From Salisapilia sapeloensis CBS 127946 (taxonomy: Eukaryota > Protista > Oomycota), in contig JAADVB010000026.1 of NCBI GenBank assembly GCA_023334545.1, positions 1-64,000 of the forward strand: a stretch of DNA of 64,000 nucleotides, given 5' to 3'. Made by a program: the position numbers and the translations under genes. The notes beneath the pieces are model-generated. The model made no database searches. It was not told the origin of the DNA and worked only from the letters and a program-made list of their open reading frames with translations. The number at the start of each line of letters is the position of its first letter. Position 1 is the first letter of the stretch. Shown here piece after piece: positions 35,319-40,808 of this stretch.

Positions 35319-37007
35319 CTATTCCAACTGGATTTTTGGAAAAGCAACAAACGGTGTCTTGTGGTCGATTTGATCCGTCATGATACCAGGTTGGTCTAAG
35401 TACAGCTTCGCGTGGTTGACGGTCCTTGAGCCTGCTGGGGTACCGATGCGATCAAGAATACGTGACGCAGACGAAGGAATGGCAGGTTGGAGCAAAATAG
35501 TACACACTCGAACGGCATCAATGGATGTGTAAAGAACGGTGTCTAGACGCTCTTTCGTGACTCGATACTCGTCTGAATCCTTCTCCAATTGCTTTAACTT
35601 TTTGTTCAGTACCCAAGGAGCATTCGTCGTGAAGTAGCCATTGACATCATACAAGAAGCGAACGATCGCTTGGAGTCCGTTGTGGAAATCTGGGACCTCA
35701 AAGCACCGTTCGACCTCGACTAATAGATCCTCGGCCTTTCGCTTTAAACTCTCTTCTTCATCTCCTAACACGGCAGGAAGTGCTGGCATCCGGCCGTCTT
35801 GTAAAAATGCTTTTCCAGTACTTCTAGACAGTAAGTTTCCAAGCGTGTCAGCGAGTTCACTATTCACCCGAGTTTCCAGTAACTTGGCATTAAAGTCACC
35901 ATCGTTACTTAGTACACTATCACGCAAGAGGAAGAAACGCACGGGGTCTGGACCGTATAACTTTAGCAAGTCTAACGGATTGACAACGTTGCCCAGACTC
36001 TTAGACATCTTCACGTTGTCCACTGTCCAGTGGGAATGGGCGACAATACGTTTCGGTAGTGGTAATCCGGCGGCCATGAGGAAGGCAGGCCAGTAGATCG
36101 CGTGAAATTTCAAAATGTCCTTGCCGACGATGTGGTAGTCGGCTGGCCATGCGTCTACTTGACCAGGATATCCAGCGCACGTGAGGTAGTTTGTAAGCGC
36201 ATCGAGCCATACGTAGACACAATGACTGTCGTCATCAGGGACATCGATCGCCCATTGAATTTTCGACCGCAAGCGAGAGACAGAGATGTCCCGAAGACCT
36301 GCTTCGACAGTCGCACGCACTTCATTATGTCTACTGGGTGGTACGACCGCATCCGGATTGGCATCCAACCATTCGAGCAATTGGTCTTGGAAAGCAGACA
36401 ATTTGAACTTATAGTTTTCTTCACGTAGCTTTTCAACTCGATGACCACTCTCTTTCGATATCTTGTACTCTCCGTCAGCAGAATCTTCAACCTGCAAGTC
36501 CGTCAGGAATGATTCATCCGATTTACAGTACCACGACTCGTGTTCGCCCAAGTAGATGTATCCATTATCTCGGATCGTACGCCACAATACTTCTACTGCC
36601 TTGTGATGATCGGGTTCACTCGTACGAATGTAGCGCGAGTACTGGACATCACACTGGTCAAACGTCGATTGAAAGCGAGCCGAGATGCTATCACAAAAGC
36701 TCTTATAATCAGTTGTACCACTAGCTTCCGCTGCTTCCTGTACTTTCAATCCGTGCTCATCCGTGCCAGTAGTAAATCGAACAGACTTATTCTTCAATTG
36801 AAACCACCTTGTCATGGCATCCGTCAGCACTGCTGAATGGACATGACCAATATGTGGCTCTGCATTCACGTAGAAAATAGGTGTCGTCAATAGCATTGGT
36901 TTTGCATCATCTTTGCCATCATTCGCAGTCGTAGCAAATGGTCGATGGATACTAGAGTATCGCTTCGATAAGCAAGTAGGCCGCAAGCCACTTGACCTCC
37001 GCCACAT
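35319..37007 (-). CDS. MARS2: Methionyl-tRNA synthetase, mitochondrial type
   Basis: TPIFYVNAEPHIGH (HIGH motif), TGTDEHGLK, YVWLDALTNY, KMSKSLGN; Arg/Ser-rich N-terminus. Confidence 0.95.
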   Translation of the reverse strand: MWRRSSGLRPTCLSKRYSSIHRPFATTANDGKDDAKPMLLTTPIFYVNAEPHIGHVHSAVLTDAMTRWFQLKNKSVRFTTGTDEHGLKVQEAAEASGTTDYKSFCDSISARFQSTFDQCDVQYSRYIRTSEPDHHKAVEVLWRTIRDNGYIYLGEHESWYCKSDESFLTDLQVEDSADGEYKISKESGHRVEKLREENYKFKLSAFQDQLLEWLDANPDAVVPPSRHNEVRATVEAGLRDISVSRLRSKIQWAIDVPDDDSHCVYVWLDALTNYLTCAGYPGQVDAWPADYHIVGKDILKFHAIYWPAFLMAAGLPLPKRIVAHSHWTVDNVKMSKSLGNVVNPLDLLKLYGPDPVRFFLLRDSVLSNDGDFNAKLLETRVNSELADTLGNLLSRSTGKAFLQDGRMPALPAVLGDEEESLKRKAEDLLVEVERCFEVPDFHNGLQAIVRFLYDVNGYFTTNAPWVLNKKLKQLEKDSDEYRVTKERLDTVLYTSIDAVRVCTILLQPAIPSSASRILDRIGTPAGSRTVNHAKLYLDQPGIMTDQIDHKTPFVAFPKIQLE

Positions 37008-37111
37008 CTTGCGTTAGAGGTTCAGGAATTGGTGTGTGATTATCGTATGTGCTAAACTATGCATACGTATAAATAGCGTCCGATCCCAGGTCGACACGTC
37101 ACCAAAAAGCG

Positions 37112-39226
37112 ATGTTAAGGGTCGGAACGCGGCGTATCCGAGCTGCTTGTGCGCCTCTTGCGACTCATCGGAAGCAACTAGCTACTGCAACTTCTAACTA
37201 TTGGTCCAGTGGATCTGAGAATGACCGATCGACTATCTCAAAGGCTCTATTATTCGCACTAGGGGCGACGGGAGCTGGAGCGATTCTATTTGGTGATCAT
37301 GAAGCTGACAATTGCGGCATTGTGGGCGTCGTGAGCAAGAATGATACGGCTTCTGACTTTCTACTGGAAGGATTGACCATCCTGCAGAATCGAGGGTATG
37401 ATTCAGCCGGTATGTCGACGCAAAAGTTCGATCCAGAGACTCCGAACGAGCCGGCACCCATCACGACGACCAAGTTCGCGTCCGTTCGTAACACTGCTGA
37501 CTCTATCCTCTTATTGAAAGAGACTCGAGGCAAGCATGATGGCAATAACGTCGGTATTGCCCACACACGATGGGCGACGCATGGTGCCAAAACCAACCAG
37601 AATTCGCATCCGCACGTAGACTCTCACAATCGCGTCTCGCTCGTACACAATGGAACGTTGACAAACTACTACGAAATCAAGCAGGAGCTCATGGAAGAAG
37701 GAATCAAGTTCTCCACGGAAACGGATACGGAAGTTGCAGCGCAACTGATTGGACATTTCATGGGCGAAGGTGCCGATCTAGTGACAGCCACTCGTCTCGC
37801 GCTTAGTAAGCTCGAAGGTACATGGGGCATCTGTGTCATGTCGAGAGACGATCCTGGCAAGATCGTCATCGCGCGAAACGGGTCGCCGATCTGCATTGGC
37901 TACGGTAGCGATGAAATGTACGTAGCGTCCGAAACGACAGCATTCAGTCGATACACCAAGCGCTTTATCTCGCTACAAGATGGAGAGATTGCCGTCCTAT
38001 CTTCTGAGTCCGCTGAAGTCAATCCTCCTCATGACGACAAAGGATTGCTGCAAAACTTCCCGACAAGTCGATTCGCCATTGCCCCAGACGTGAAAGTTCG
38101 AACGACACCTGCACCGTATCCCCACTGGACGATACGCGAGATCATGGAACAACCGAAAGCTGTCGCTTCTGCCCTCGGCTATGGTGGACGTGTATCTGAT
38201 GATCACGTCTACCTCGGAGGTCTCGAAGCCGATAAAGACCGCATACTACAGATAAAGCACTTGCTCATCTCTGCCTGTGGAACCTCCCTCTATGCCAGTA
38301 AATACGGCGCGAAGCTCATGCGTTCATTGAACTCGTTTGATTCAGTCGCGACGGAAGATGCGTCCGAGTGCTCGAGCGATAGGTTCCCACGAAAAGATGG
38401 TGGTGTCCTCGTCGTGTCTCAATCAGGAGAAACCAAAGACGTCCATCGTGTGCTTAAGTCTGTCGAGGAACTGCCGCTTGAGATCCCGACATTTTCCGTC
38501 GTGAACAACGTCGGATCGCTCATTGCACGCACGACCAAGTGCGGCGTCTACTTGAATGCCGGACGTGAAATGGCTGTGGCGAGCACCAAGGCATTCGTGA
38601 CGCAGGTAGCTGTCATGGGTCTCATTGCCTCCTGGTTCTCACAAAACCGAGCGGATGGTAATCGAGGCAAGCGTGAGGAGCTCATCCAATGCATGCACCG
38701 TCTTCCGATCGCCATTGGCATGGCTCTACGCACACGCGACCAATGTGCCTCTATCGCGGATCACCTACTCGGTGCAGAGCACTTGTTCGTGCTCGGTCGT
38801 GGCTACGGAGAACCCATTGCATATGAAGGTGCGCTAAAGATCAAGGAGATTACGTACTTGCATGCAGAGGGTTATCCTGGTGGAGCTCTCAAGCATGGTC
38901 CGTTTGCATTGATTGAAGGGGAGAAAGATGGCAAGTTTGGTGCGACGCCCATCATTCTCATCGTTCTAGACGATGAGCATGCCAACTTCATGAAAACGGC
39001 AGCGGAAGCTGTACGTGCGCGAGGTGCATACACGATCGTTATCACTGATAATCCAGAGATGTGTGAGAGCATTGCTGACACGGTCGTGCCTATCCCGACG
39101 AATGGACCGATGACAGCGTTGCTCGCATCAATTCCGTTGCAACTGATTGCGTACGAACTGGCAGTACGTCGAGGCGTGAACCCAGATGTGCCACGTAACT
39201 TGGCCAAGTCCGTGACAGTCGATTAG
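37112..39226 (+). CDS. GFA1: Glutamine:fructose-6-phosphate amidotransferase (GFAT/GlmS) with 67-aa N-terminal extension
   Basis: CGIVG, RGYDSAG, GIAHTRWATHG, HNG, SQSGET, VASTKAF, EGALKIKE, LKHGP, C-terminal PRNLAKSVTVD. Confidence 0.96.
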   Translation: MLRVGTRRIRAACAPLATHRKQLATATSNYWSSGSENDRSTISKALLFALGATGAGAILFGDHEADNCGIVGVVSKNDTASDFLLEGLTILQNRGYDSAGMSTQKFDPETPNEPAPITTTKFASVRNTADSILLLKETRGKHDGNNVGIAHTRWATHGAKTNQNSHPHVDSHNRVSLVHNGTLTNYYEIKQELMEEGIKFSTETDTEVAAQLIGHFMGEGADLVTATRLALSKLEGTWGICVMSRDDPGKIVIARNGSPICIGYGSDEMYVASETTAFSRYTKRFISLQDGEIAVLSSESAEVNPPHDDKGLLQNFPTSRFAIAPDVKVRTTPAPYPHWTIREIMEQPKAVASALGYGGRVSDDHVYLGGLEADKDRILQIKHLLISACGTSLYASKYGAKLMRSLNSFDSVATEDASECSSDRFPRKDGGVLVVSQSGETKDVHRVLKSVEELPLEIPTFSVVNNVGSLIARTTKCGVYLNAGREMAVASTKAFVTQVAVMGLIASWFSQNRADGNRGKREELIQCMHRLPIAIGMALRTRDQCASIADHLLGAEHLFVLGRGYGEPIAYEGALKIKEITYLHAEGYPGGALKHGPFALIEGEKDGKFGATPIILIVLDDEHANFMKTAAEAVRARGAYTIVITDNPEMCESIADTVVPIPTNGPMTALLASIPLQLIAYELAVRRGVNPDVPRNLAKSVTVD

Positions 39227-39297
39227 CATCTTTGAGTAAGTAAACAAGCTCCATACAAAGTACTTTTTTCTCTCTACACCCATCTCTTTTATCCTTG

Positions 39298-40808
39298 CTA
39301 GTTCTTCTTTAGATTGATCATCTTGGAAGGACCTATGGGAATTACTTGTAGCATCGTTCGATTCTGAATGCCTGCATTTGCAAGTGTTTCGTCCAAGTGA
39401 CGTAGACGCTTTCCATGCGGAAAGAAAAGGTCGAAGCTATTGGTACTGGTAAATCGTCTTTGCCTACGTAGCAAGACAGACTTGAGGTGGCCAACTGTCT
39501 TGGAAGTGTGGACTTGAATAGTAATCAGCATGCCTCCAGGCAGTCGAAAGCTTACTGCTATAAAGACCCCTTTGTCGTCTAGATCTAATTCACTTTTCCT
39601 TTCACTTACGAGGTGAAACACATCGTCTACTTCTTGACCTTGCTGTAGTATTTGCGTGGAAGACGGAGAGTTGGTCGACACCGATGTGGTTACTTCATCT
39701 TTGCTATCGTCTACGTTTCCATCAAGATCTTCGTCTTGAGCAACATACCTGAGGAGACCACAGCGCTTTGCAAGTTGAGTAATGCGTCGCTTTCCACTTG
39801 GCTGGCATTTAACCCAGTCCAAAGCATCAAATTCGTCTTTAGCATTTTTGCTCTTACCTCGTTCTTTCGATAGCATCGGCAAGGAGGAAGAGCGATCTAA
39901 CTTTGCTCCCTCTTTATTTCCCTCTAGTTGATGCTTATACGTAGCAATGGCACTCTCGACCTTCTTTTTCTGCTGAAAGTATGCATCAGATCCGTTCCAT
40001 GCATCTGAAACTGCGTTAGACGGCAGCTTATAGCCAGGATTCCAGACAATGTTGCGCTTCGCATTCGACTTTCCAAACAATGCCGTCGTAGATTCTTCTT
40101 CCCGGTTGTGATAACTTGATTGAGCATCCCACAATCTTGGGATGCCGAGCTTTACGTCATCCGTGTATTCACTAGGTTTAGCCATATCCATTACTCGTTC
40201 AGCTTTCGGAAATCGGTAGCTTTGGACACTGCTTAAAATCACGTGGTAACTTGGATTCTGTTCACCTCGTGTACCTTCGCACTCTTGTTCTACTTGAAAT
40301 CGATCTTTTCGCGATCCAAATGGAAACTTCCTGCCTTTGCGAGTAGATGATGTCGGCGCCGAAAGCTCTACCGTTGTCATACCTCTTGGTTTTGTCCCCT
40401 TTAGCATACGCTTCGCTTTGGTGATACGCTTGGAACCTGATGAAGGATCGCGTGGTTTCGAACGAAAGCAGGCCGACTCTTGTAAATTCTTATCCAAAGC
40501 CCACGGATCTCTCAAATCGTACGCTCCTGGACCAGGTTCGTTCTACGTATATGATAATAAAAAGCTTCATCACAAACAACATTGACGTGCATCCTTACCT
40601 CACTTTCATCTTTCGAACCACGGCGTAGTGTACTCTCAAGTGCATAAGAAGGTGGTACATGAAGTTTTTTGGCCAACTTGTCTACATCCACGTCCACTTT
40701 TTGTGACTCTAGCTTCACAAGCAATCGAAAGATGTCGGACGACAGTACTGGCTGATGTCCGAGTACCTCCTCGACTGGATGATACATGCATCGTGTATTC
40801 ACCATCAT
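39298..40808 (-). CDS. Hypothetical protein with a PGPGAY (STPG/SHIPPO-like) motif and C-terminal ubiquitin-like domain, 2 exons
   Basis: Intron GTAAGG...CGTAG at about 40597-40543 joins SKDESE|NEPGPGAYDLRDPW. C-terminal FRLPGGMLITIQV..KTVGHLK..TLANAGIQNRTMLQVI is UBL-like. Start could be 40808 or 40787. Confidence 0.65.

What the first reader, a model, noticed from the sequence alone, without database searches (positions are those of the whole stretch)
37112..37330. GFAT catalytic Cys sits at residue 68 behind a mitochondrial-type bipartite presequence
Seen: MLRVGTRRIRAACAPLATHRKQLATATS (Arg-rich, no acidic residues), then hydrophobic ALLFALGATGAGAILFG, then HEADN|CGIVG (Cys codon 37313-37315). 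There is no Met near the Cys. Known: GFAT is an Ntn amidotransferase that needs a free N-terminal Cys, is cytosolic in animals and fungi, and the related PurF removes a propeptide. Inference: the enzyme is imported into mitochondria (perhaps stop-transfer/intermembrane space) and activated by cleavage, implying organellar entry into hexosamine synthesis. This would fit other relocated carbon metabolism in stramenopile mitochondria.
Basis: partly seen in the sequence, partly recalled or inferred. Interest (0 to 1): 0.7.

Follow-up and report, generated by a model that had tools for sequence, protein, structure and literature searches.

The report
GlmS enzyme behind bipartite mitochondrial presequence
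An oomycete's only glucosamine-6-phosphate synthase has a 67-residue leader that looks like a mitochondrial intermembrane-space sorting signal ending in a signal-peptidase site right before the catalytic cysteine, a design shared across stramenopiles, alveolates and rhizarians, which may explain why earlier papers predicted, without explanation, that this enzyme is "mitochondrial".

Summary
Window 37112-39226 (+) is one unspliced 704-aa ORF for a bacterial-type GlmS/GFAT. Its catalytic Cys is residue 68 (codon 37313-37315). The only Met codons in the first 120 residues are 1 and 101, and an in-frame stop lies 14 codons upstream.

Transcript-like contigs from three runs start at 37103-37113 and run collinear with the genome, so no splice puts a Met before the Cys.

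The leader has three parts:
- a basic part with no acidic residue in its first 30 residues (1-44);
- an Ala/Gly/Leu hydrophobic stretch (45-61);
- a polar spacer, DHEADN (62-67).

All 97 full-length eukaryotic orthologues share this plan, from oomycetes, diatoms, other stramenopiles, rhizarians and a colponemid alveolate. Position -3 is A/S/T/V in 95 of 97 and -1 is always C/N/A/S/T, never Met. The hydrophobic stretch usually ends 4-9 residues before the Cys. This is the type-I signal-peptidase rule.

Best reading (about 0.55): import through TIM23, arrest in the inner membrane, and cleavage by an IMP-like peptidase that frees active enzyme into the intermembrane space.

Mitochondrial targeting of stramenopile GFAT was already predicted in three papers. 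The bipartite/IMS reading and the cleavage site at Cys1 appear in none of the three. No localisation experiment exists.

The parts
37068..37075 (+). TATAAATA box in the 104-bp divergent intergenic region
   Evidence: Read directly. It lies about 28-35 nt upstream of the contig starts at 37103-37113. Its function is inferred from spacing only.
37103..37111 (+). Very short 5' leader of the transcript (apparent)
   Evidence: contigs of runs X2, X1 and X4 begin at 37103, 37107 and 37113. No contig of these three runs covers 37013-37102. Assembled contigs can lose true ends, so the start site is approximate.
37112..37243 (+). Leader part 1, residues 1-44: basic, Ser/Ala/Arg/Leu-rich presequence-like segment
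   Evidence: 6 K/R and 0 D/E in the first 30 residues. The start M-L-R is conserved in oomycete orthologues. In the family this part is S 17%, A 14.5%, R 11.6%.
37244..37294 (+). Leader part 2, residues 45-61: hydrophobic Ala/Gly/Leu stretch (candidate stop-transfer/sorting segment), preceded by Lys44
   Evidence: mean Kyte-Doolittle 1.88 over 17 residues, the highest in the whole protein; the only helix in the leader (42-54); family median length 17 and mean hydropathy 1.74.
37295..37312 (+). Leader part 3, residues 62-67: polar spacer D-H-E-A-D-N with Ala at -3 and Asn at -1 (candidate signal-peptidase site)
   Evidence: -3 is A65 S12 T11 V7 P1 I1; -1 is C60 N19 A11 S4 T3; spacer median 7 residues. 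It is unchanged in the 3.5%-divergent relative.
37313..37315 (+). Codon of catalytic Cys68, equivalent to Cys1 of GlmS
   Evidence: alignment to E. coli GlmS residue 1. It is an invariant column in alignment A1.
37313..39226 (+). Mature GlmS/GFAT (637 aa): class-II glutamine amidotransferase domain plus two SIS domains, with stop codon
   Evidence: GATase_6/7, SIS x2; E. coli GlmS, end to end; mean pLDDT 83 for the whole 704-aa model; the mature part is mostly above 85.

Best explanation
The gene encodes a bacterial-type glucosamine-6-phosphate synthase (GlmS), made as an inactive precursor with a 67-residue bipartite leader.

Proposed route. The basic N-terminal part takes the precursor through TOM and TIM23. 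The hydrophobic stretch (residues 45-61), with a positive residue on its matrix side and acidic residues on its outer side, stops transfer in the inner membrane. A type-I signal peptidase of the inner membrane (IMP-like) then cuts after Ala-Asp-Asn, releasing a soluble enzyme into the intermembrane space. Its new N-terminus is the catalytic Cys.

Consequences. The step that completes sorting would also create the free alpha-amino Cys that every Ntn amidotransferase needs. In the intermembrane space the enzyme would draw fructose-6-P and glutamine from, and return glucosamine-6-P to, the cytosolic pool through porins.

Shown here: the sequence anatomy, the absence of splicing in the assembled contigs, the conservation and the site pattern. 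Inferred: import, arrest, the identity of the protease and the final compartment.
For: Gene model. It is a single ORF with a stop 14 codons upstream and no Met between residues 1 and 101. In three runs the contigs end at the neighbouring gene's 5' end (37009-37012) and start again at 37103-37113. They have 0 differences, 0 gaps and no joints through 39400, and depth changes between genes, as in transcript assemblies.

Catalytic requirement. Cys68 equals Cys1 of E. coli GlmS and is invariant. The fold starts at residue 68.

Conservation. All 97 full-length eukaryotic orthologues carry a basic, acid-poor N-part (median 7 K/R against 1 D/E), then a hydrophobic stretch (median 17 aa), then a spacer of median 7 residues (85 of 97 within 4-9). 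Position -3 is A/S/T/V in 95 of 97, with one Pro and one Ile; -1 is C/N/A/S/T in 97 of 97 and never Met. All 10 bacterial relatives start M|CGIVG. The set spans oomycetes, diatoms, a dictyochophyte, Spongospora and a cercozoan (names) and Colponema.

Close relative. Organism B, 3.5% divergent, has 6 conservative changes in the leader against 1 in the next ~335 residues, with the spacer unchanged.

Literature.
- IMP removes the sorting part of bipartite presequences. Imp1 substrates have Asn at -1, H/D/F/M at -2, a hydrophobic -3 and a preserved distance from the membrane segment (PMC8835746). The window's A-D-N site matches at -1 and -2.
- DeepLoc scores the P. infestans GFAT as mitochondrial at 0.926, and oomycetes are listed with an 'M' form only (bioRxiv 10.64898/2026.07.27.741032).
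- Diatom GFATs are predicted mitochondrial and also carry weaker signal-peptide calls, and fructose-6-P is not made in mitochondria (PMC5124317). An intermembrane-space location would explain both points.

In-window contrast. The neighbouring MetRS has a basic leader but no hydrophobic stretch: best 15-aa hydropathy 0.75, against 2.04 for the GFAT leader.
Against: There is no experimental localisation, N-terminal sequencing or import assay for any member, and none was found in the paper library.

The -3/-1 rule is shared by ER, bacterial and thylakoid signal peptidases, so it does not by itself name IMP. The yeast Imp1 motif is only partly met: -3 is Ala rather than Ile/Val, and +1 is Cys rather than Asp/Glu.

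The amphipathic moment of the first 30 residues is not significantly above shuffles (0.69 against 0.58 +/- 0.13; 20% of shuffles reach it).

The hydrophobic stretch is Ala/Gly-rich and only moderately hydrophobic, so arrest in the membrane is not assured, and 15 of 97 stretches contain a Pro.

A few orthologues have short leaders that look like plain signal peptides (Spongospora P0120, Rhizochromulina P0062) or long spacers of 23-40 residues (P0016, P0077, P0110).

The runs used for the transcript evidence are only guessed to be RNA, and contigs drop rare isoforms. TargetP and MitoFates could not be run. The presence of IMP genes in this genome was not checked.
Confidence: 0.55

Rival explanations
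1. Matrix enzyme. The basic part imports the whole precursor into the matrix, and the rest of the leader, including the hydrophobic stretch, is removed there by a second peptidase or by self-cleavage at Cys68.
For: DeepLoc and other predictors call 'mitochondrion' without sub-compartment. The hydrophobic stretch is only moderately hydrophobic, and 15 of 97 contain Pro, which favours passage to the matrix in yeast (own knowledge). The same preprint predicts glutamate synthase, another enzyme of glutamine/glutamate nitrogen metabolism, to be mitochondrial.
Against: Fructose-6-P is not known to be made in or carried into mitochondria (noted in PMC5124317), and only the pay-off half of glycolysis is mitochondrial in oomycetes. 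The later hexosamine steps are predicted cytosolic in diatoms. The conserved hydrophobic stretch plus -3/-1 site at a fixed distance has no role in plain matrix import.
Confidence: 0.15
2. Self-cleaved propeptide, as in Bacillus and animal PurF. The Cys itself cuts the bond before it, and the leader's conserved end reflects the needs of that reaction, whatever the compartment.
For: Ntn hydrolases commonly self-process, and PurF removes an 11-residue propeptide (own knowledge). PurF chains match the glutaminase domain from Cys68 (1ao0, 1gph).
Against: The leader is 67 residues (family median 80) with targeting-type composition and a membrane-type stretch, unlike the short PurF propeptide. The -3 small/-1 small pattern with a charged -2 is the signal-peptidase rule. 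The closest bacterial relatives need no propeptide at all. AlphaFold2 does not dock the spacer onto the domain (pLDDT below 50 for 49-67), which is weak evidence only.
Confidence: 0.1
3. Mitochondrial transit. The precursor engages the import machinery and is cut by IMP, but much of the mature enzyme ends up back in the cytosol, so mitochondria serve only to make the N-terminus.
For: Yeast Ptc5 has a presequence plus a transmembrane segment, has been detected in the intermembrane space, and reaches peroxisomes via mitochondrial transit (PMC7217942, abstract and title). The pathway's other steps are cytosolic.
Against: No second targeting signal is visible. The C-terminus (KSVTVD) is the conserved GlmS catalytic tail, not a PTS1. 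This reading is purely speculative for the family.
Confidence: 0.08
4. Secretory or other membrane route. The hydrophobic stretch acts as an internal signal peptide or signal anchor cut by the ER signal peptidase.
For: The -3/-1 rule also fits the ER peptidase. [quoted passage not shown] One T. rotula copy is predicted ER. Some rhizarian leaders are short.
Against: The hydrophobic stretch starts at residue 45 (family median 55) after a long Arg/Ser/Ala-rich, acid-poor segment, which is not the layout of ER signals. The ER lumen lacks an obvious supply of substrates (inference). The diatom plastid-type signal is excluded because the hydrophobic part is not at the extreme N-terminus and +1 is Cys, not an aromatic residue (own knowledge of the ASAFAP rule).
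Confidence: 0.07
5. Gene-model artefact. The true protein starts with Met-Cys through a splice, another start site or an assembly error.
For: None was found. The only caveat is that contigs can hide rare isoforms.
Against: There are no joints, gaps or differences in contigs of three runs. No AG acceptor lies directly before the Cys codon. There is no Met at -1 in any of the 97 orthologues, many of them from transcriptomes. The M-L-R start is conserved.
Confidence: 0.02

Closest known systems
Bacterial GlmS (E. coli glucosamine-6-phosphate synthase; PDB 4amv, 2j6h, 1jxa)
   Same: The alignment is end to end, 68-704 against 1-608. It covers the Cys1-Gly-Ile start, the class-II amidotransferase domain, two SIS domains and the conserved C-terminal tail. 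The closest bacterial sequences are 55-58% identical by BLASTP (58-60% in alignment A1).
   Different: Bacterial enzymes start Met-Cys and need only Met removal. This one has a 67-residue leader and no Met next to the Cys.
Animal/fungal GFAT (human GFAT1; PDB 6r4e and others)
   Same: Same reaction and same domain plan.
   Different: A more distant subfamily: E about 1e-85, matched in two stretches, against 1e-97 in one stretch for E. coli. It is cytosolic, starts Met-Cys, and is regulated by phosphorylation and UDP-GlcNAc (own knowledge).
Bipartite intermembrane-space presequences cut by IMP (yeast cytochrome b2, cytochrome c1, Mcr1, Gut2, Ptc5, Prx1)
   Same: A basic targeting part, then a hydrophobic sorting part, then a cut a fixed short distance after it. 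Asn at -1 and Asp at -2 fit Imp1 substrates, and Ala at -1 in some orthologues is a standard signal-peptidase site (the Ala-Imp2 link is own knowledge).
   Different: The cut would create a catalytic N-terminal nucleophile, which is not described for any known IMP substrate. -3 is Ala rather than Ile/Val, and +1 is Cys rather than Asp/Glu. Cleavage by IMP is not shown.
Organelle-targeted Ntn amidotransferases (plant plastid PurF/ATase2, PDB 6lbp; plant Fd-glutamate synthase) and the PurF propeptide
   Same: Removing an N-terminal extension must expose Cys1 (for the PurF match; the rest is own knowledge).
   Different: Those use plastid transit peptides or a short self-cleaved propeptide. None has a hydrophobic sorting stretch with a signal-peptidase site, and none is a GlmS/GFAT.
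Earlier predictions of mitochondrial GFAT in stramenopiles (Traller 2016, PMC5124317; Mendoza & Judelson 2026 preprint; T. rotula 2026 preprint)
   Same: Same enzyme family and same N-terminal signal, scored by predictors as mitochondrial.
   Different: They treat it as an unexplained matrix-type prediction, or as specific to oomycetes. None mentions the bipartite layout, the intermembrane space, the conserved cleavage site at Cys1 or the spread across stramenopiles, alveolates and rhizarians.

Membership tests
[quoted passage not shown] | Class-II (Ntn) glutamine amidotransferase domain beginning Cys-Gly-Ile | tested here: met
   Pfam GATase_6 8.8e-20 and GATase_7 7.9e-15. Cys68-Gly-Ile aligns with residues 1-3 of E. 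coli GlmS. C68, G69 and I70 are invariant in 44 sequences.
[quoted passage not shown] | Two SIS (sugar isomerase) domains and the conserved C-terminal tail | tested here: met
   SIS 2.8e-31 in two stretches. The alignment runs to the last residue of E. coli GlmS.
[quoted passage not shown] | Free N-terminal Cys in the mature enzyme | not testable with these tools
   This needs N-terminal sequencing or N-terminomics. The gene offers no Met-Cys start, so a proteolytic cut is required.
Bipartite mitochondrial intermembrane-space presequence (cytochrome b2/c1 type) | N-terminal positively charged, acid-poor targeting segment | tested here: met
   6 K/R and 0 D/E in the first 30 residues. Family N-part has median 7 basic against 1 acidic residue and is rich in S/A/R/L. 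The amphipathic moment alone is not significant (20% of shuffles reach it).
Bipartite mitochondrial intermembrane-space presequence (cytochrome b2/c1 type) | Hydrophobic sorting stretch after the targeting segment, with basic residues before it | tested here: met
   Residues 45-61 with mean hydropathy 1.88, preceded by Lys44. Family: median 17 aa and a median of 1 basic residue in the 6 positions before it.
Bipartite mitochondrial intermembrane-space presequence (cytochrome b2/c1 type) | IMP cleavage site: small or Asn at -1, hydrophobic or small at -3, at a preserved distance from the stretch | tested here: inconclusive
   The general -3/-1 rule is met in the family (-1 in 97 of 97; -3 A/S/T/V in 95 of 97), and the spacer has median 7. 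The yeast Imp1 motif [I/V][H/D/F/M]N|[D/E] is met at -1 and -2 but not at -3 or +1.
Bipartite mitochondrial intermembrane-space presequence (cytochrome b2/c1 type) | Membrane-potential-dependent import, two-step processing and intermembrane-space residence | not testable with these tools
   No experiment was found in the library.
PurF-type self-cleaved propeptide | Short hydrophilic propeptide without targeting features | tested here: not met
   The leader is 67 residues with a basic start and a 17-residue hydrophobic stretch.
ER signal peptide / diatom plastid bipartite signal | Hydrophobic core within roughly the first 20-30 residues; for plastids, an aromatic residue at +1 | tested here: not met
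   The core starts at residue 45 (family median 55), and +1 is the invariant Cys.

The most novel reading that the evidence does not exclude
Across stramenopiles, alveolates and rhizarians, a GlmS of bacterial type is a resident of the mitochondrial intermembrane space. It would be made as a zymogen whose catalytic N-terminal Cys is unmasked by the inner-membrane signal peptidase. That would make it the first metabolic Ntn amidotransferase activated by IMP, placing the committed step of hexosamine synthesis inside the mitochondrial envelope of a major part of eukaryotic diversity. A further speculative point is that this route lets a bacterial-type enzyme escape cytosolic N-terminal modification of Cys1.
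Probability: 0.45. Interest if true: 0.7.

Novelty: new variant of a known kind. Interest (0 to 1): 0.55.

Why it matters
Three papers have noted, without explanation, that stramenopile GFAT is predicted to be mitochondrial although its sugar substrate is not made there. An intermembrane-space location would explain this, because that space shares small metabolites with the cytosol.

It would add a large metabolic enzyme to the short list of IMP substrates, of which only about nine are known in yeast. It would also show protein sorting and enzyme activation joined in a single cut.

According to the preprint's table, oomycetes have only this form, so N-glycosylation, GPI anchors and chitin in these organisms, many of them plant and animal pathogens, depend on it. 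A bacterial-type enzyme with an unusual maturation step is therefore of interest as a target for study.

The conservation across three supergroups dates the arrangement to a very early ancestor.

Tried and rejected
- RNA evidence: no run is on record as RNA. The contig lay-out behaves like transcript assemblies, but raw-read 5' ends could not be seen.
- N-terminomics: the supplements of the Thalassiosira amino-termini study (PMC3774753) were searched for the expected neo-N-terminal peptide and for the enzyme name, with no occurrence. This is uninformative because the stored files may be cut.
- Literature: searches for a glucosamine-6-phosphate synthase in the intermembrane space, for stramenopile mitochondrial proteomes and for organelle-targeted amidotransferase propeptides gave nothing relevant.
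- Amphipathic-helix test of the first 30 residues: not significant.
- Tree of mature parts: bacteria form one clade, but the root, and so the direction of transfer, is unresolved without a wider outgroup.
- Asn-cyclisation idea: an intein-like break at Asn67|Cys68 was considered and rejected, because most orthologues have Cys, Ala, Ser or Thr at -1.
- Rhomboid cleavage: rejected because the required cut lies 6 residues outside the hydrophobic stretch.
- Searches not run: the large exhaustive protein search was left out because the word search already gave ample relatives. A search for a second, animal-type GFAT and for IMP genes in this genome was not possible without a query sequence.
- Earlier scan notes: searches by words returned nothing on this theme.
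Full report
**1. What is in the sequence**

Window 37112-39226 (+) is one open reading frame of 704 codons. Pfam finds a class-II glutamine amidotransferase domain (GATase_6, GATase_7) and two SIS stretches. Against solved structures the best match is E. coli GlmS, aligned in one piece from residue 68 to 704 against residues 1-608 (E about 1e-97). Human GFAT1 matches less well and in two pieces. So this is a glucosamine-6-phosphate synthase of the bacterial type, and Cys68 (codon 37313-37315) is the catalytic Cys1.

- Residues 1-28 are rich in Arg and free of acidic residues.
- Residues 45-61 (ALLFALGATGAGAILFG) form the most hydrophobic 17-residue stretch of the whole protein.
- Residues 62-67 read D-H-E-A-D-N.
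- Met occurs only at positions 1 and 101 within the first 120 residues.
- An in-frame stop lies 14 codons upstream of the ATG.

AlphaFold2, run on an alignment of 44 sequences, gives no confident structure before residue 68 apart from a helix at 42-54. The confident fold starts exactly at Cys68.

**2. Is the gene model right?**

Four public runs hold the stretch, but none is on record as RNA. In three runs of one study the assembled contigs behave like transcripts:
- One contig covers the neighbouring gene and stops at 37009-37012.
- No contig of these three runs covers 37013-37102.
- A new contig starts at 37103, 37107 or 37113 and runs on through 39400 with no difference, gap or joint.
- Depth differs about five-fold between the two genes.

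A TATAAATA box at 37068-37075 sits about 30 nt before these starts. So the message appears to begin a few bases before the ATG and is not spliced. No form that would place a Met before the Cys is seen. Contigs can hide rare isoforms, and their ends are approximate.

A fourth run, from a relative about 3.5% divergent, holds a contig from 37121 to 39268. Applying its listed differences gives six conservative amino-acid changes in the leader against one in the next ~335 residues. The spacer before the Cys is unchanged.

**3. Conservation**

The word search returned oomycete orthologues at 74-81% identity (Pythium, Globisporangium, Phytophthora, Peronospora, Albugo, Saprolegnia, Aphanomyces). It also returned many eukaryotic sequences at 52-58% identity, together with bacterial 608-residue GlmS at 55-58%. 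One eukaryotic sequence was identified as Colponema vietnamica, an early-branching alveolate. Others are named as diatoms, a dictyochophyte, Spongospora and a cercozoan.

All ten bacterial sequences start Met-Cys. Every full-length eukaryotic sequence has an extension of 36-128 residues.

In the 97 extensions that start with Met and are at least 35 residues long:

| Feature | Value |
|---|---|
| N-part charge | median 7 basic, 1 acidic residue |
| N-part composition | S 17%, A 14.5%, R 11.6% |
| Hydrophobic stretch | median 17 residues; A 32%, L 19%, G 13.5% |
| Spacer to the Cys | median 7 residues; 85 of 97 within 4-9 |
| Position -3 | A 65, S 12, T 11, V 7, P 1, I 1 |
| Position -2 | nearly always D, E or K |
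| Position -1 | C 60, N 19, A 11, S 4, T 3; never Met |

The pattern holds in 71 non-redundant leaders. Background frequencies in the leaders are 0.46% for Cys and 17.8% for Ala. The sequences are related, so these counts are not independent trials. Even so, the leaders are otherwise almost unalignable, which shows selection on the features rather than on the sequence.

**4. Most likely mechanism**

A basic, acid-poor start followed at a distance by a hydrophobic stretch, then a cut a few residues later at a small -3/small -1 site, is the layout of the bipartite presequences that send proteins such as cytochromes b2 and c1 to the intermembrane space. In that route the matrix-targeting part engages TIM23, the hydrophobic part stops transfer, and the inner membrane peptidase IMP, a type-I signal peptidase, releases the mature protein (PMC8835746 and PMC8847149).

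Known Imp1 substrates have Asn at -1, H/D/F/M at -2 and a hydrophobic -3, with a preserved distance from the membrane segment. The window's A-D-N|C matches at -1 and -2 but not at -3 or +1. Most orthologues have the standard small residue at -1.

GlmS needs the free amino group of Cys1 (established knowledge of Ntn amidotransferases), and the gene offers no Met-Cys start. A cut exactly here is therefore required for glutamine-dependent activity. I infer that the sorting cut is also the activating cut.

The intermembrane space is the compartment that makes metabolic sense:
- Fructose-6-P is not made in mitochondria (PMC5124317).
- Only the pay-off half of glycolysis is mitochondrial in oomycetes.
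- The later hexosamine steps are predicted cytosolic in diatoms.
- The outer membrane is open to small metabolites (own knowledge).

In the same window, the neighbouring MetRS (35319-37007, minus strand) has a basic leader with no hydrophobic stretch, as expected for a plain matrix protein.

**5. What is already known**

- Traller et al. 2016 reported that three of four Cyclotella GFATs are predicted mitochondrial, that all have weaker signal-peptide calls, and that the substrate supply would be a problem.
- A 2026 preprint on Thalassiosira rotula repeats the observation and calls it unclear.
- Mendoza and Judelson (2026 preprint) list P. infestans GFAT (PITG_02122) with a DeepLoc mitochondrial score of 0.926. 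They mark Pythium and P. parasitica with a mitochondrial form only, and call Phaeodactylum cytosolic and Ectocarpus plastidic.

None of these mentions the two-part layout, the intermembrane space, the conserved site at the catalytic Cys or the spread beyond stramenopiles. No experiment on location or processing was found.

So the bare claim that GFAT is mitochondrial in stramenopiles is not new. The reading given here is a new variant: a known enzyme with a known kind of signal, in a combination not described.

**6. Rivals**

- **Matrix location with a second cut, or self-cleavage as in PurF.** This remains possible. The stretch is only moderately hydrophobic and 15 of 97 contain a Pro. It leaves the conserved signal-peptidase geometry and the substrate supply unexplained.
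- **Processing at the inner membrane followed by return to the cytosol.** This is conceivable by analogy with yeast Ptc5 but has no support here.
- **A secretory route.** The hydrophobic stretch lies too far from the N-terminus.
- **A gene-model artefact.** This is effectively excluded.

**7. Limits**

- All evidence on targeting is by sequence pattern and by published predictors.
- TargetP and MitoFates were not available.
- IMP genes and a possible second GFAT were not searched for in this genome.
- The runs are only presumed to be RNA.
- The tree places the five closest bacterial sequences as one clade among the eukaryotic ones when rooted at the midpoint, so the origin of the gene is unresolved.

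**Verdict**

Confidence is about 0.55 for import, arrest and an IMP-type cut that exposes Cys68 in the intermembrane space. Interest is 0.55.

Noticed in passing
window 35319-37007 (-) and 37008-37111: A methionyl-tRNA synthetase (Pfam tRNA-synt_1g, 3e-98) lies here. Its leader is basic, with no acidic residue in the first 29 residues and no hydrophobic stretch, so it is probably the mitochondrial matrix enzyme. It is transcribed divergently from the GlmS gene across only 104 bp. Contigs end 2-5 nt beyond its ATG.
   Followed up: partly
orthologues P0001-P0120, position -1 before the catalytic Cys: A Cys-Cys doublet (Cys at -1) occurs in 60 of 97 orthologues, against a background Cys frequency of 0.46% in the leaders. 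The window's protein and the Saprolegniales have Asn instead. The small-residue rule does not explain why Cys is so strongly preferred.
   Followed up: partly
tree of mature parts, alignment A1: The five closest bacterial GlmS form one clade; one is from a Patescibacteria MAG and one lies on a 617-kb contig. In the midpoint-rooted tree the clade lies in a polytomy with colponemid and rhizarian sequences. The direction of gene transfer between bacteria and these eukaryotes is open.
   Followed up: partly
window 39227-39607 and the gene at 39298-40515 (-): The GlmS contigs run about 200 nt past 39400 into the 3' end of the convergent neighbouring gene. This suggests overlapping or abutting 3' ends of the two transcripts.
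   Followed up: no
P0016 (Albugo laibachii), P0077, P0110 (Helicotheca tamesis): In these exceptions the hydrophobic stretch lies 23-40 residues before the Cys instead of 4-9. The -3/-1 pattern is still kept.
   Followed up: no
literature: Table S3 of the Mendoza and Judelson preprint scores Phaeodactylum GFAT as cytosolic and Ectocarpus GFAT as plastidic. The diatom transcriptome orthologues found here all carry the bipartite leader. Truncated gene models or other paralogues may explain the difference.
   Followed up: no
window 37112-39226, placement among oomycetes: The protein is at most 81% identical to any oomycete sequence in the database. It groups, on a rather long branch, with the clade represented by P0005, which has no source name; the inference that this is the Phytophthora/Peronospora group rests on leader similarity. 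The source species seems not to be represented in the protein collection.
   Followed up: no
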